Assembly: GCA_013239625.1 (NCBI GenBank)
Contig: MU056146.1
Span: 5,855,314 to 5,919,313 of the forward strand
Source of the DNA: Lama guanicoe
Lineage: Eukaryota
Direction of reading: 5' to 3'
DNA length: 64,000 nt
Shown: positions 1,185 to 38,588 of the stretch, piece by piece
Numbering within the stretch: the first letter of the stretch is position 1
Layout: every line of letters begins with the position of its first letter
The notes under the pieces: model-generated
Told to the model about the DNA's origin: nothing
The model's database searches: none
Seen by the model: only the letters and a program-made list of their open reading frames with translations
Made by a program: the position numbers and the translations under genes

Positions 1185-1260
1185 GAAACACAGCAAGATT
1201 CATTCCATCAGAAGCCTTGCTACGCAGCCTACAGAGCCGAATTCAGAAGTGCCAAAACAA
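1185..1260 (+). CDS. FARP1: FARP1 coding exon (~exon 12), end of FERM-adjacent region: (R)KHSKIHSIRSLATQPTEPNSEVPKQ
   Basis: Pyrimidine tract + ccag acceptor, gtcagt donor; 76 nt (phase 2 to 0); matches recalled FARP1 KHSKIHSIRSLASQPTE. Confidence 0.93.
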
Positions 1261-2354
1261 GTCAGTGATGATGGTGTTCAGTATTACAGCTCTGTCTGTC
1301 ACCAGACTTCCTCTACTGAGCCCTGTGTCGCCTAGCATGCTCTTGGGTTCTCTGTCCTTCCCCTCGGGGGTGTTGTATGGAGGAGAGCCAGACACAGCCT
1401 GAGCTCTGGGTCCTTCCCCAGCTGACTCCCTCTCCCGTGCTCTCGCCCCAGGGAAGTTGGCTCTGTTGGCCTGAACTCAGCTTAGGGCTGGAACCACCCA
1501 TGGGAGCCAGAGCTGAGCCCACCCTCCAGCTAAAGGGCTGCGCTTGTGCGAAGAGGTCAGGACCTACTTCGCGAGTGCTGGGTGCAGCTCCCCTTGGGTG
1601 CCAGGGTCAGAACCTTGTGCTGGCACTGGACTGGGCGGTGAGTTCCCAGGGCTCAGATTACAGGGCAGCAGCCACAGTGGCAGCGAGACACATGATCACT
1701 CTTGCCCAGCGGGTGGCCCGAGCTCGTTTTCCCTGGGGTTGGTATCTGGATGAGTTTTCAGGGTTTTCTCTGTGGTAGAATAAGAACTTTGTTGGAGAAG
1801 AACACGAAGGTGATTTCATTGTGTGAATCTGAAGTAAGTCCTTAACCTGCCCATCGTACCCTTAGGAATCCAGTCAAAGAAATCTTTGTCATTTGTCTGA
1901 AGTCCATGTCAGCCGGCCTTGGCGGGGGTGGGGAGCGGTCCGTGATATCTTCTTTTCCTCCCCCTGCCGGCGCCTCCTCAGGAAGCCCCCTGTGGGCTGG
2001 AAGGGCTCCCTTGTTGCACAGAAACTTTAGAAACCCAAGGTGAGACTGAGTCCCGGAAATGAGAGGCGCTGCCTCACCTGTGCTGCTGGGGACTCCGCAG
2101 TATCGGCTTCCACACCGTGAAAGAATATTCTGGATCCTGACCAGACACCCCGGGGAGTGCCCTGGGGGTTGCCCACTTACTGCCAGGGTGCCTTGTTCTA
2201 CGCCGGTGGAGGGCGGGCTTTATGCGGCAGTCGTTTGGGCCGCTTGATGCTGAAGGAGGTGCTGTTAAATTAGCCCCTGCGTCTCTCTCTAACCCTCTCC
2301 CTTTTCTCTTCATCTCCCCGCTCCTTTTCTTGCACCACCCCACCCCCGCCCCAG

Positions 2355-2604
2355 TCTCAGCAGAGTGCCAGCCTTACCCTCGGAGAAGGTGCTGAATCCC
2401 CAGGCAGCCAGAGCTGCCAGCCAGGAAAGGAACTGAATGTTTCCGCCCAGGAGAGCGGGCCGCCACGCAGCCCCGCTGCACAGAAGAGCCCGGCAGGGAG
2501 CACGCCGGCCGACGGAGCCGTCAGGGCGACGGTGGAGGAAGAGGAGGAGGTCGTTAAGGACAGGACCCAGCAGAGTAGACCTCAGCCCCCGCAGCCAAGC
2601 ACAG
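2355..2604 (+). CDS. FARP1: FARP1 coding exon (~exon 13), S/P-rich linker: SQQSASLTLGEGAESPG...EEEEEVVKDRTQQSRPQPPQPST(G)
   Basis: Long pyrimidine tract + ccag at 2351-2354; ends ACAG|gtccag; phase 1 joins the exon at 16318 to give PQPSTGSLTGSPHL, as in recalled FARP1. Confidence 0.93.
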
Positions 2605-3581
2605 GTCCAGCATCCAGGGCTGCTAGAGGCAGCAGCGCTTCCATTCCTTTCATTGACTGCAGTGACGTAGACAGTGAATCCGACCTTCTCAGGGAACACG
2701 CATCCCAGTCACGGTCCCAAACAAATGACAACTATGAGGGTGATTTGACCAGTGGTGTTTATCTGCTCTCCCGGGAGGAGAGGCGAATAGAAGCTAGGCA
2801 TTCTAGGGCTTCCCCGCACTCTGTGAAGTCCTCCCGGCCTCCTTCCAGAGAATTCCTTGACGATGATTCGGCAGACATATCCTTTGATGTGAGCGGGAGC
2901 CCCAGACTCCCAAGACATAGCTCTCTGATAGATGAGATGTTCGGGGGCTCAGGCAGCCACAGTCCCTTGGCCACCCCCTTATCTCCCAGCAGCAGAAGCT
3001 CAAGTCCAAATATGCCTTGGGGCCGGACCAGGTCTCAAGGCTATGTTTCCGAAAACGGACATGACCCTAGAGAGAGAAGTGTGGGAGAAGGTACTCTCCT
3101 AAGCCCGGGTCCTCATTACGAAAACTGTTCTCCCGTCTCACAAAGGCCGTATTTAAAGAGTCTTCCCGGTGGATACAATAAGTCAGAGACAGATCCACTC
3201 ATTCTTAGCCGGGGAGCATCAACCCCAGAGGCAGCAGGTAGGCTTGACGGCCCCGGAGAGGGAGGAGTGGTCGGCCCGGCTGGCTTGGAAGGCAGGACGC
3301 TGGCTAATGGGACCCCTCTCGTGGGTCCAGCCTCCAAGACCCTCACTGCGCAGGCAGCCCATACCAGTCGCCTGGGAGACCAGCTGGCCCCCCTGCAGGT
3401 GACCGAGGGCTCCACCAGCAGTGGGACTGAATCCAGCGATTCAGACTCTGAGATGGTGAGCCCTCTGAACCAGCCCCTCGTGTTTGGTAATCCAGCCGTG
3501 CTGGGTTCCCCCTGCGTGGAGAGGAATAAGAAGTCCCTGAGTGGCCTGCGTGTGAAGGAGGAGAGGGAGGAGAATGAGTGA
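2605..3581 (+). CDS. FARP1: Putative alternative terminal extension of FARP1 exon 13: in-frame read-through of 324 extra aa, Ser/Pro/acidic, FRMD7-like C-terminus
   Basis: Frame is open from 2355 to TGA 3579-3581 across a very weak donor; GC/CpG-rich up to the stop, then AT-rich; ends ESSDSDSEMVSP...SLSGLRVKEEREENE. Confidence 0.72.
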
Positions 3582-4649
3582 GGAGACTCGAAGGCATGTC
3601 TTCAAGTGTCGGGAGCCTGGGTTCCTGAGTCCCGGCTTTCGGTGGAGATGATCTGTGCTAGCGACTTGTGCATTTTTAATTGACATCTGTTAGAGGAAGT
3701 TTGGGGCAGGCACACGTTGGATAGGGCATGCCTGACTTCTCAGAGAAACCAAACTTCACAAAGCCTGACAAATTACCAAGAGCTTGTTTATCTTTCTGGT
3801 GGAAGGCTAGAAAGAAATACTTTATTACGAATCTGATCAGTGTGTAGCGTGTCGTATTTATGTGGAAATTTTCTTGTATGTTCAGTTCTGTAGGCAGATC
3901 ACCCTCCCATTTGGTTGAGTCTGGGGACTGAAATAGCACTGAGACCCCAGGAAAAGTGTTGGTTTTACTTTTAACCCCTTCTTGAAAAGGGGGGCTGCTT
4001 TTCTGTGCCTCGTAAAGTGAGAAACTGACAAAATTCAAGGCCAAATGTAAGTTGATTGCTAGTTGAGGTGAAGTGTTTGTGAAATCTTAGTTAAGACTAG
4101 TGAACATTTTAATCAGAAGCACGTGGAATTACTTCTTTGCAGACTTTGTATGAAATGATATAAAAGTCATAGAATCTTCAGGAGCTGTAAGTGACATGAG
4201 ATTGCTGGTTCGGTTTGGGTTTGGTTTGGGTTTGCTTTGGTGGGTCAAATTTGTTGGTTATGTTTGAAGAAGCTGTAACTGGTGAGCAGAACCTCTTGGT
4301 GAAGCACAGACATGCTGTCAGGCGATGGTGCAGGAGGAAGTAGGTACTGTTGTCACCGGGAGGTTGGCAGACTGAATGCTGCCTTTGAATAGTGCACAGC
4401 ACAGAGAAGGGCCGAGTCCCAGTCTCATTGCCTTGGGTTGAGTTTTACGCACATTCTTAATGTTCACTCTCTTGGGAACAGCAGCTTCTCTCAGAAGCTG
4501 ACTTACGGCTGCTTCTCTGTGCAGGAAGAAAGAAAGTGAAAGTAGCAAGAAGTCTGGCTTCTTTTTAAATCTTGACCACCTACACCAGTGCCTTTCACCC
4601 AGCACTCCTGCATTTCAGATGAAGAGCCTGGTTTGGACTTGCTTTGTGT

Positions 4650-4790: not shown

Positions 4791-5374
4791 TCCTCAGCCA
4801 AACATGATTGCCTTCTAGACTCTGGTGGAGTGTAAGGAAAGCGCTGGCTGAAATTCTGGCTTGCTTGCTGAGTAGGAAGAGGGTCACAAATGAAGTGCTT
4901 TTCTTCATGCCTGTTATTTGGTACTTTTTAGTCTTCGGTACTTTTTTAAAAAAAATAAATTGTAGAGTAAAAGTTTTAGATCCTAAGTAACCACAAAATC
5001 CTCGAGCAGAGTTGTAACAACGATACATCTGATGTCTGCCATGCCAGTGGCCTTAGTAAAACCTCATCATGTGGCTTTGTCATGCGGAGGGGCTGATCAT
5101 GGGTAGGAAACGGAGTAGAATTTGGCAGCAGTATTTCACGAACAGAAATATTGACTGACCTTGTGGTTCACAAGTGATTATCTGTCCACATGAATGTCCA
5201 GAGGTTGGTTTTAAAGATTCTGAAAACTTTAATCCATTTTTATACACACTTCTGCTCTGTCTTCCTAATCATTTGATTCAGTGCATGATTGATGAATCAA
5301 ATTGATTATCGGATAGCTTGAAAGATGTTCATTGAAGTAGTCTATTCATGTCTTGCTTTAGAATTACATATTTA

Positions 5375-7807: not shown

Positions 7808-7912
7808 TTTTTTTTTTTTTTTTAATTTTTCTTTAACGGAGGTCCTAGGCCTTGAACCCAGGACCTCATGCATGCTGAGCATGGGCTCTACCACTGAGCT
7901 TTATCCTCCCGC
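7808..7912 (-). mobile_element. tRNA-Ala-like SINE (camelid Vic-1-like)
   Basis: ttgaacccaggacctcatgcatgctgagcatg...ccactgagct with poly-T tail; TSD cagttgattctt/cagctgactctt. Confidence 0.8.
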
Positions 7913-16317: not shown

Positions 16318-16505
16318 GCTCCCTGACTGGTAGCCCTCACCTTTCAGAGCTGTCCATCAACTCGCAGGGAGGAGCCGCCCCTGCCAACGCCATCCTGTCC
16401 CCCAACCTGAGCCCCGACACCAAGCAGGCATCTCCCTTGGTCAGCCCACTGCTCAACGACCAGGCGGGCCCTCGGACGGACGACGAGGAGGACAGCCGGA
16501 GAAAG
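16318..16505 (+). CDS. FARP1: FARP1 coding exon (~14): GSLTGSPHLSELSINSQGG...DDEEDSRRK
   Basis: T-rich tract + acag acceptor, AAG|gtgtga donor, 188 nt (phase 1 to 0), matches recalled FARP1. Confidence 0.95.
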
Positions 16506-16539
16506 GTGTGAGGATGGGTGTGGGCTTATCTGCTCATCT

Positions 16540-17703: not shown

Positions 17704-17793
17704 AGATTCCCAACGGACAAAGCATACTTCATCGCCAAGGAAGTCTCCACCACCGAGAGAACGTATCTGAAGGACCTTGAAGTCATCACTTCG
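17704..17793 (+). CDS. FARP1: FARP1 coding exon (~15), DH domain start: RFPTDKAYFIAKEVSTTERTYLKDLEVITS
   Basis: gcag acceptor, gtatgt donor, 90 nt; DH CR1 motif TERTYLKDL. Confidence 0.97.
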
Positions 17794-27736: not shown

Positions 27737-27865
27737 NNNNNNNNNNNNNNNNNNNNNNNNNNNNNNNNNNNNNNNNNNNNNNNNNNNNNNNNNNNNNNNN
27801 NNNNNNNNNNNNNNNNNNNNNNNNNNNNNNNNNNNNNNNNNNNNNNNNNNNNNNNNNNNNNNNNN
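27737..27865. other. Assembly gap (129 N), inside a MER3/MER33-like element (27705-27910)
   Basis: N run; flanks gctgccctgtcccagatggtagcc / atttccatcatcatagaaagttct. Confidence 0.95.
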
Positions 27866-38470: not shown

Positions 38471-38588
38471 NNNNNNNNNNNNNNNNNNNNNNNNNNNNNN
38501 NNNNNNNNNNNNNNNNNNNNNNNNNNNNNNNNNNNNNNNNNNNNNNNNNNNNNNNNNNNNNNNNNNNNNNNNNNNNNNNNNNNNNNNN
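38471..38588. other. Assembly gap (118 N) with duplicated flanks
   Basis: N run; gagagtcccc..gccatcaggatggcagaatcctatgc(A)n appears on both sides. Confidence 0.95.

What the first reader, a model, noticed from the sequence alone, without database searches (positions are those of the whole stretch)
2355..3581. Hidden GEF-less FARP1 isoform: exon 13 reads through its donor into a 324-codon alternative terminal exon
Seen: the exon-13 frame stays open for 324 codons past the donor at 2604/2605, to TGA 3579-3581. It is the longest ORF in the window, free of repeats and GC/CpG-rich like the true exons, and composition turns AT-rich soon after the stop. At ~3.5% stops per codon, a run this long in one specified frame has a chance of order 1e-5 (rough estimate). 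Known: canonical FARP1 is FERM-FA-linker-DH-PH-PH, and all DH/PH exons lie downstream (17704 onward). Inference: skipping this donor gives a FERM-FA protein with a disordered tail and no GEF module. It could act as a scaffold or compete with full-length FARP1 for FERM partners (e.g. SynCAM1, plexins). I do not recall it among the standard human isoforms, though predicted gene models may include it.
Basis: partly seen in the sequence, partly recalled or inferred. Interest (0 to 1): 0.9.

Follow-up and report, generated by a model that had tools for sequence, protein, structure and literature searches.

The report
Known FARP1 read-through coding tail
The long open frame that runs on past FARP1 exon 13 is a real coding sequence kept from sharks to mammals, but the exchange-factor-less protein it makes is already in gene annotations and was detected as protein in mouse brain in 2021.

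Summary
The exon-13 frame stays open past the donor at 2604|2605 to TGA 3579-3581. Stop to stop this is 435 codons, the longest open stretch in the window (next 235). Chance from local composition is about 5e-6.

The tail (325 codons from 2604) is real coding sequence. Its protein is conserved over its full length from elephant shark to mammals, with invariant short motifs. The stop sits at the same position in about 20 mammalian lineages.

FERM-FA-tail proteins of about 750-820 aa without DH/PH are annotated in fish, frog, birds, a marsupial, bats, pig, hamster, lemur, orangutan ("FARP1 isoform 12") and, by name, human. Six such proteins sit on contigs of only 2.7-4.5 kb, so they come from spliced mRNA.

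Li et al. 2021 (PMC8248162) reported this 800-aa intron-retained Farp1 isoform in mouse brain with nine intron-specific peptides.

One addition: the same frame also serves as an internal extension through downstream donors, as in mouse "isoform 2" (1278 aa) and a bat model. C. elegans frm-3a/b has the same gene design.

The scan's earlier notes on this come from this same window only.

The parts
1185..1260 (+). Preceding FARP1 coding exon (end of the FA region, ...RKHSKIHSIRSLATQPTEPNSEVPKQ), followed by donor CAA|GTCAGT
   Evidence: Its translation matches the lemur model P0154 just before SQQSAS. The start coordinate is approximate, placed at the acceptor cccag|G.
2355..2604 (+).
   Evidence: It joins in frame to exon 14 at 16318 (G + GC = Gly).
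2602..2610 (+). Weak canonical donor CAG|GTCCAG, which also encodes Gly-Pro of the tail
   Evidence: A simple position-weight score gives -3.5 bits, against +4.6 to +4.9 for GT sites inside the tail. Gly-Pro-Ala at this point is kept in nearly all vertebrates in A1, which forces GTCCNG.
2605..3578 (+). Read-through coding tail (325 codons counted from 2604), intrinsically disordered, Ser/Gly/Pro-rich
   Evidence: HMMER against 1.84 billion proteins found 26 hits, 9 below 1e-30, most covering residues 1-325. Alignments A1 and A2 cover it. AlphaFold2 gives mean pLDDT 48 and no secondary structure. Ser is 17%, Gly 10%, Pro 9%.
2640..2678 (+). Invariant motif SIPFIDCSDVDSE (SIP[FY]IDCSD in all vertebrates compared)
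   Evidence: Invariant columns S6-S17/E18 in A1, from shark to mammals.
2910..2942 (+). Conserved motif PRHSSLIDEMF
   Evidence: H98 and S99 are invariant; L101, E104 and F106 are near invariant.
3177..3209 (+). Conserved motif NKSETDPLILS
   Evidence: N185, S187, T189, D190, P191, L194 and S195 are invariant.
3234..3243 (+). Candidate alternative donor cag|GTAGGC (exon end 3237), in the phase that joins exon 14 in frame
   Evidence: It has the highest score among phase-1 GT sites in the tail, 4.6 bits. Its use in this species was not tested.
3408..3452 (+). Conserved acidic serine cluster GSTSSGTESSDSDSE
   Evidence: T264, S265, S266, G267 and D272 are invariant from shark to mammals.
3477..3494 (+). 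Motif LVFGNP containing a candidate alternative donor ttg|GTAATC (exon end 3486, phase 1)
   Evidence: The bat model P0177 (1338 aa, with RhoGEF and PH) joins ...HPLMFG directly to SLTGSPHLSE.
3579..3581 (+). Stop codon TGA of the GEF-less reading
   Evidence: The distance from the SSDS motif to the C-terminus is 49 aa in 18 of 22 mammalian sequences and 48-51 in the rest. All end in an acidic ...EE.EE.E.
3595..3609 (+). Possible relic of the ancestral C-terminus (HVFKC) in the +1 frame just after the stop
   Evidence: Non-mammals end in ...SDEDG.HVF[SGR]C. The window reads EETRRHVFKC in the frame starting at 3580. It may be chance.
16318..16506 (+). Next canonical exon (GSLTGSPHLSELSINSQGG...DSRRK), acceptor aacag|GC, donor AAG|GTGTGA

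Best explanation
This is a real, ancient, already annotated alternative coding extension of a FARP1 exon.

When the weak donor at 2604|2605 is not used, translation runs on in frame for 325 codons to TGA 3579-3581. The transcript presumably ends at a poly(A) site further into the intron. The product is a protein of about 790-800 aa: FERM and FA domains plus a disordered tail with conserved short motifs, and no DH-PH-PH module.

By analogy with C. elegans FRM-3A and with FRMD7, it most likely acts as a GEF-independent membrane scaffold through its FERM-FA part. The tail motifs would add partners or regulation.

The same open frame can also be left through downstream donors that are in phase with exon 14. 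That gives long FARP1 forms which carry part of the tail and keep the GEF.

Shown: the frame, its conservation, the fixed stop, gene models, and spliced mRNA-like contigs in other species. From a paper: peptides in mouse. Inferred: that this species makes the isoform, where its 3' end lies, and what the protein does.
For: Frame and chance.

Conservation: 26 HMMER hits cover the tail, from teleosts, sturgeon, a dolphin and a camel. In the 13-species alignment 39 columns are invariant from Callorhinchus to mammals.

Architecture: FERM_N, FERM_M, FERM_C and FA, then the tail, without RhoGEF or PH. Examples are P0012, P0013, P0075, P0080, P0081, P0154, P0164, P0168, P0169, P0184, P0181 and P0175, and many more.

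Spliced mRNA: the whole FERM-to-tail protein lies on contigs far too short to be genomic. These are P0173 (793 aa on 3695 nt), P0187 (786 aa on 2974 nt), P0090 (813 aa on 2720 nt), P0109, P0116 and P0144. In this window exon 13 to exon 14 alone spans 13.7 kb.

Fixed stop and length in mammals. A conserved C-terminal ...VF[SGR]C in shark, sturgeon, teleosts, frog, gecko and birds makes sense only as a true C-terminus.

Protein evidence: PMC8248162 reports nine intron-specific peptides, 244 spectrum matches and 132 mouse brain samples. It also says the sequence is an exon of a human Ensembl transcript.

Same design in worms: frm-3b arises by splicing inside the last frm-3a exon, and FERM-FA alone rescues the mutant (PMC7260190).

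Weak evidence in this genome: five runs recorded as RNA-Seq, from two studies, hold 0.38 of the sampled words.

Within placentals the tail evolves fast, 65-80% amino-acid identity, and the last 30 residues are loosely conserved in sequence.

The mouse peptides could in part come from the long isoform that keeps the GEF. The paper does not separate the two.

Many gene models are automatic predictions.
Confidence: 0.9

Rival explanations
1. The frame is kept mainly for long FARP1 isoforms that retain the GEF. In these, exon 13 is extended to a downstream donor and then joined to exon 14. Reading on to the stop would be a minor by-product.
For: Mouse 'isoform 2' (P0186, 1278 aa) carries about two thirds of the tail plus RhoGEF and PH. 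The bat model P0177 joins LMFG to SLTG. Fish isoform X2/X6 models of 1360-1420 aa have almost the whole tail in an internal position. The window has phase-1 GT sites at 3237 and 3486.
Against: The stop position and the length after LVFG are fixed in about 20 mammalian lineages. A conserved true C-terminus ...VFSC exists in non-mammals. cDNA-like contigs end with the tail's stop. The junction points of the long models differ between mouse, elephant shrew, aardvark/elephant and bat, so several may be pipeline artefacts. The two uses do not exclude each other.
Confidence: 0.15
2. The tail is translated from a separate transcript that starts inside the GC-rich intron upstream of exon 13, giving a tail-only protein without FERM.
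For: Intron 12 (1261-2354) is GC-rich, 0.55-0.63. Some automatic models start inside exon 13, such as P0030 (356 aa) and P0003 (209 aa).
Against: Those short models look like ab initio fragments. Full FERM-FA-tail proteins occur on single short contigs. No promoter evidence was obtained.
Confidence: 0.04
3. It is a chance open frame in a GC-rich intron with no coding role.
For: High GC lowers the stop frequency. No Pfam or PDB match was found. There is no predicted fold.
Against: P is about 5e-6 by composition. Homology runs the full length across more than 400 million years with invariant motifs. The stop is fixed. Peptides were reported in mouse.
Confidence: 0.005

Closest known systems
Intron-retained 800-aa Farp1 isoform of mouse brain (Li et al. 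2021, PMC8248162) and the matching Ensembl/NCBI FERM-FA-tail models (e.g. Prolemur 783 aa, Sus scrofa 788 aa, Pongo 'FARP1 isoform 12')
   Same: The exon is the same and the read-through frame is the same. The tail is 65-80% identical over its full length, the stop is at the same position, and there are no DH/PH domains.
   Different: Nothing of substance differs. This is the orthologue in another mammal; the closest named relative is Camelus ferus at 96%. Expression in this species was not shown here.
Mouse FARP1 'isoform 2' (P0186, 1278 aa) and similar long models
   Same: They use the same open frame beyond the exon-13 donor.
   Different: They leave the frame through a downstream donor and keep RhoGEF and PH. 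The mouse junction (after ...ATPQG) has no GT at the matching place in the window. The window's own candidates are 3237 and 3486.
C. elegans FRM-3A / FRM-3B (PMC7260190)
   Same: One gene gives two forms: FERM-FA plus a C-terminal part without a recognisable domain (A), and FERM-FA plus GEF (B). The B form arises by splicing inside the last exon of the A form. FERM-FA alone is sufficient for the synaptic scaffold role.
   Different: Sequence homology between the worm and vertebrate tails was not tested. The worm function (UNC-40/DCC and LIN-2/CASK binding) is only an analogy for FARP1.
FRMD7 (FERM-FA plus a long C-terminal domain, binds CASK; PMC3633374)
   Same: It is the closest paralogue of FARP1/2 and has the same overall layout as the GEF-less isoform. 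From my memory only, the end of FRMD7 carries an acidic serine cluster and an ...SLQLDEE...-like stretch resembling the non-mammalian FARP1 tail end.
   Different: [quoted passage not shown] I could not obtain a named non-human FRMD7 sequence, so homology of the tails is untested (one search came back nearly blank).

Membership tests
GEF-less FARP1 isoform (FERM-FA-tail, about 780-820 aa) | The frame of the FA-linker exon continues past its donor without a stop | tested here: met
GEF-less FARP1 isoform (FERM-FA-tail, about 780-820 aa) | The tail is homologous over its full length to the C-terminal part of annotated FERM-FA-tail proteins | tested here: met
   Identity is 77% to Prolemur, 72% to pig, 61% to Sarcophilus and 39% to Callorhinchus.
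GEF-less FARP1 isoform (FERM-FA-tail, about 780-820 aa) | The stop codon is at the family's conserved position | tested here: met
   There are 49 aa after the SSDS motif, as in 18 of 22 mammalian sequences.
GEF-less FARP1 isoform (FERM-FA-tail, about 780-820 aa) | An mRNA of this species joins the FERM/FA exons to the unspliced tail | not testable with these tools
Only one upstream exon lies in the window.
GEF-less FARP1 isoform (FERM-FA-tail, about 780-820 aa) | The protein is detected | not tested
   Reported for mouse only, in PMC8248162.
Composite terminal exon made by intronic polyadenylation | A used cleavage/poly(A) site lies in the intron downstream of the stop | not testable with these tools
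   AATAAA/ATTAAA hexamers occur at 4954, 5617, 6722, 10792, 11437 and elsewhere, but no 3' end data could be laid.
Extended-exon long FARP1 isoform (tail part plus GEF) | A downstream GT lies in phase with the next exon | tested here: met
   Phase-1 GT sites lie at 3237 (4.6 bits) and 3486 (matching the bat junction LMFG|SLTG). Their use was not tested.
FRMD7-type C-terminal domain | Significant sequence or profile similarity to the FRMD7 C-terminal domain | not tested
   No named FRMD7 sequence was obtained. One weak unnamed hit, P0026 (E 8.5e-4), was left alone because its cluster may come from human DNA.

The most novel reading that the evidence does not exclude
The tail may be the ancestral 'A-isoform' module of the whole FARP/FRMD7 family. 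The ancestor would already have made a GEF-less and a GEF form from one gene, as C. elegans frm-3 still does. FARP1 kept both, and FRMD7 would be the paralogue that kept only the GEF-less form, so that its 'orphan' C-terminal domain descends from this tail.

The invariant motifs would then give a GEF-independent scaffold function. One of them, SIP[FY]IDCSD, looks from memory like a FFAT-type VAP-binding motif. Placental mammals would have lost the ancestral ...VFSC end through a frame change just after 3578.
Probability: 0.3. Interest if true: 0.5.

Novelty: already known. Interest (0 to 1): 0.2.

Why it matters
FARP1 is studied almost only as a Rac GEF in dendrite and synapse formation. An abundant, conserved isoform without the GEF module would change how knock-downs, antibodies and FERM-partner experiments are read. 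This point is already in the literature and in annotation, so the present window adds only an orthologue.

What this check adds:
- the depth of conservation, from shark to mammals;
- the fixed stop position in mammals;
- the double use of the frame, as a terminal exon and as an internal extension;
- a set of invariant short motifs that could guide experiments on what the tail does.

Tried and rejected
- Pfam and PDB sequence searches of the exon plus tail found nothing.
After that, no letters of 2533-2623 were sent to any search tool; queries started at 2624 or 2625.
I therefore had no orthologous DNA, no dN/dS, and no look at the UTRs of the cDNA-like contigs.
- A search for named FRMD7 proteins with an 81-residue piece of the sturgeon tail returned only sturgeon and paddlefish FARP1.
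- The ESM Atlas look-up gave only generic disordered vertebrate fragments, with scores of 0.84 or less.
- A paper search for the motif GSLQLDEE, for 'intronic polyadenylation' with FARP1, and for short/long-isoform wording gave nothing useful.
- A downstream mini-exon encoding the ancestral ...VFSC end was looked for in all three forward frames and not found.
- The strong GT sites at 3455, 3398 and 3577 are in the wrong phase to join exon 14.
- The record named Homo sapiens (P0167) was noted by name only and not compared.
- The unnamed cluster of P0026 may derive from human DNA. Its contigs were not fetched and it was not used as a query.
- The N runs at 27737-27865 and 38471-38588 were left as they are.

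Full report
**Observation.**
- Translation of 2355-3581 gives 408 codons and then TGA.
- The acceptor is ccccag|TCTCAG at 2354|2355. The donor is CAG|GTCCAG at 2604|2605, where the exon ends on the first base of a Gly codon.
- Stop to stop, the open stretch is 2274-3581, 435 codons. It is the longest on either strand of the window; the next is 235.
- With the tail's own base composition the stop probability is 0.037 per codon. That gives 4.8e-6 for 325 open codons. The other five frames of the same stretch hold 6 to 26 stops.
- There is no tandem repeat. GC is 0.54-0.64 inside and drops to about 0.40 soon after the stop.
- CpG enrichment is slight: 0.45 in the tail against 0.40 for the window.

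**Gene context.**
- The preceding exon (...RKHSKIHSIRSLATQPTEPNSEVPKQ) is at about 1185-1260.
- The next canonical exon (GSLTGSPHLSELS...) is at 16318-16506 and joins the base at 2604 in frame.
- FPTDKAYFIAKEV..., which precedes the RhoGEF domain in the related proteins, starts near 17704.
- The closest named relative of the tail is a Camelus ferus hypothetical protein at 96% identity. The window therefore comes from a camelid-like mammal, not from human.

**Is the tail coding?** The evidence says yes.
- A full HMMER scan of 1.84 billion representative proteins with the 325-residue tail gave 26 hits, nine below 1e-30. Most cover the tail from end to end and finish at the hit's own C-terminus. 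Their names include teleosts, sturgeon, a dolphin and a camel.
- A 13-species alignment from elephant shark to mammals has 39 invariant columns. They group into short motifs: SIP[FY]IDCSD, PRHSS-LIDEMF, SSP, NKSETDPLILS, GSTSSGTESSDS and LVFGNP. A 31-sequence alignment agrees.
- In mammals the distance from the SSDS motif to the C-terminus is 49 residues in 18 of 22 sequences and 48-51 in the others. All end in an acidic EE.EE.E. The frame and the stop are therefore kept, including the 31 codons after the last in-phase internal GT site.
- AlphaFold2 on the alignment gives mean pLDDT 48 and no secondary structure. The composition is Ser/Gly/Pro-rich. This is a disordered region carrying short linear motifs, which fits the absence of Pfam or PDB matches.

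**Is the GEF-less protein real?**
- Proteins with FERM_N, FERM_M, FERM_C and FA followed by this tail, and without RhoGEF or PH, are modelled widely. The list covers Callorhinchus, sturgeon, many teleosts, Xenopus tropicalis, a gecko, birds, Sarcophilus, bats, pig, hamster, Prolemur, Saimiri and Pongo ('FARP1 isoform 12'). There is also a record named Homo sapiens, which I noted by name only.
- Six of these proteins lie on contigs of 2.7-4.5 kb: P0173, P0187, P0090, P0109, P0116 and P0144. In this window the single intron after exon 13 already spans 13.7 kb. Such contigs must therefore be spliced mRNA that ends its reading frame at the tail's stop. P0173 and P0187 are mammalian and are only 80-85% identical to the orangutan protein, so they are not human.
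- Non-mammals end in a conserved ...SDEDG.HVF[SGR]C, which makes sense only as a true C-terminus.
- Li et al. 2021 (PMC8248162) report an 800-residue intron-retained Farp1 isoform in mouse brain. It is supported by nine intron-specific peptides, 244 spectrum matches and 132 samples. They also state that the same sequence is an exon of a human Ensembl transcript. A 2025 review repeats this.

The same frame is also used internally.
- Mouse 'isoform 2' (P0186, 1278 aa) has about two thirds of the tail followed by RhoGEF and PH.
- The bat model P0177 joins ...LMFG directly to SLTGSPHLSE.
- Fish models of 1360-1420 aa carry almost the whole tail before the GEF.
- In the window, GT sites in the required phase lie at 3237 (cag|GTAGGC, 4.6 bits) and 3486 (ttg|GTAATC, inside LVFGNP).
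- The stronger GT sites at 3455, 3398 and 3577 are out of phase.
- The junctions differ between the mammalian long models, so some may be artefacts.
- The published mouse peptides do not separate the two isoform classes unless they come from the last 31 residues.

**Mechanism.**
- The canonical donor scores -3.5 bits on a simple weight matrix. Because the tail begins Gly-Pro-Ala in nearly all vertebrates, the donor is held at GTCCNG. It appears to be weak because it also has to code.
- When it is skipped, translation runs to 3579-3581.
- The 3' end is unknown. Poly(A) hexamers occur at 4954, 5617, 6722, 10792, 11437 and elsewhere.
- The function is inferred. In C. elegans the FARP orthologue frm-3 gives FRM-3A (FERM-FA plus a featureless C-terminal part) and FRM-3B (with GEF). 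The B form arises by splicing inside the last frm-3a exon, and FERM-FA alone rescues the synaptic defect by binding UNC-40/DCC and LIN-2/CASK (PMC7260190).
- FRMD7, the closest paralogue, has the same layout and binds CASK (PMC3633374).
- A GEF-independent scaffold role is therefore the most likely one.

**Limits.**
- The only evidence from this genome's relatives at RNA level is weak. Five runs recorded as RNA-Seq, from two studies, hold 0.38 of the sampled words of the stretch. That could also be pre-mRNA or a related species.
- I built and searched no joined exon model.
- The FRMD7 tail homology remains untested. The resemblance I recall is from memory only.

**Verdict.** Interest is low as a discovery. 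Some open points remain: the function of the tail, the double use of the frame, the possible FRMD7 link, and the loss of the ancestral C-terminus in placentals.

Noticed in passing
window 3580-3609: Just after the stop, the +1 frame reads EETRRHVFKC. This resembles the ...DEDG.HVF[SGR]C C-terminus kept in shark, fish, frog, gecko and birds. Placental sequences all stop before it. It may be a relic of a frame change that removed the ancestral end, or it may be chance.
   Followed up: partly
window 7838-7908 (-): A tRNA-like match to Rfam RF00005 (31.3 bits, just above the gathering score) lies inside the stretch that another first-stage note calls repeat-poor and UTR-like. It is probably a tRNA-derived SINE.
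   Followed up: no
window 1261-2354: The intron between the two exons upstream of the tail is short (about 1.1 kb) and GC-rich (0.55-0.63). It holds a 133-codon ATG open frame at 1377-1778. Whether it carries an internal promoter was not tested.
   Followed up: no
P0026 and its cluster: This is an unnamed 542-aa open frame with weak similarity to the tail (E 8.5e-4). It has motifs such as EEFIDDDPAEISFFAGG that resemble the sturgeon FARP1 tail. It might be the matching exon of a paralogue. Its cluster occurs on many Logan/ENA contigs and may be human-derived, so it was left alone.
   Followed up: no
window 2640-2678: The invariant SIP[FY]IDCSD core, with serines before it and acidic residues after it, looks from memory like a FFAT-type motif for VAP proteins. 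No VAP sequence was available to test binding.
   Followed up: no
window 27737-27865 and 38471-38588: There are two runs of N (129 and 118 bases). They were left as they are.
   Followed up: no
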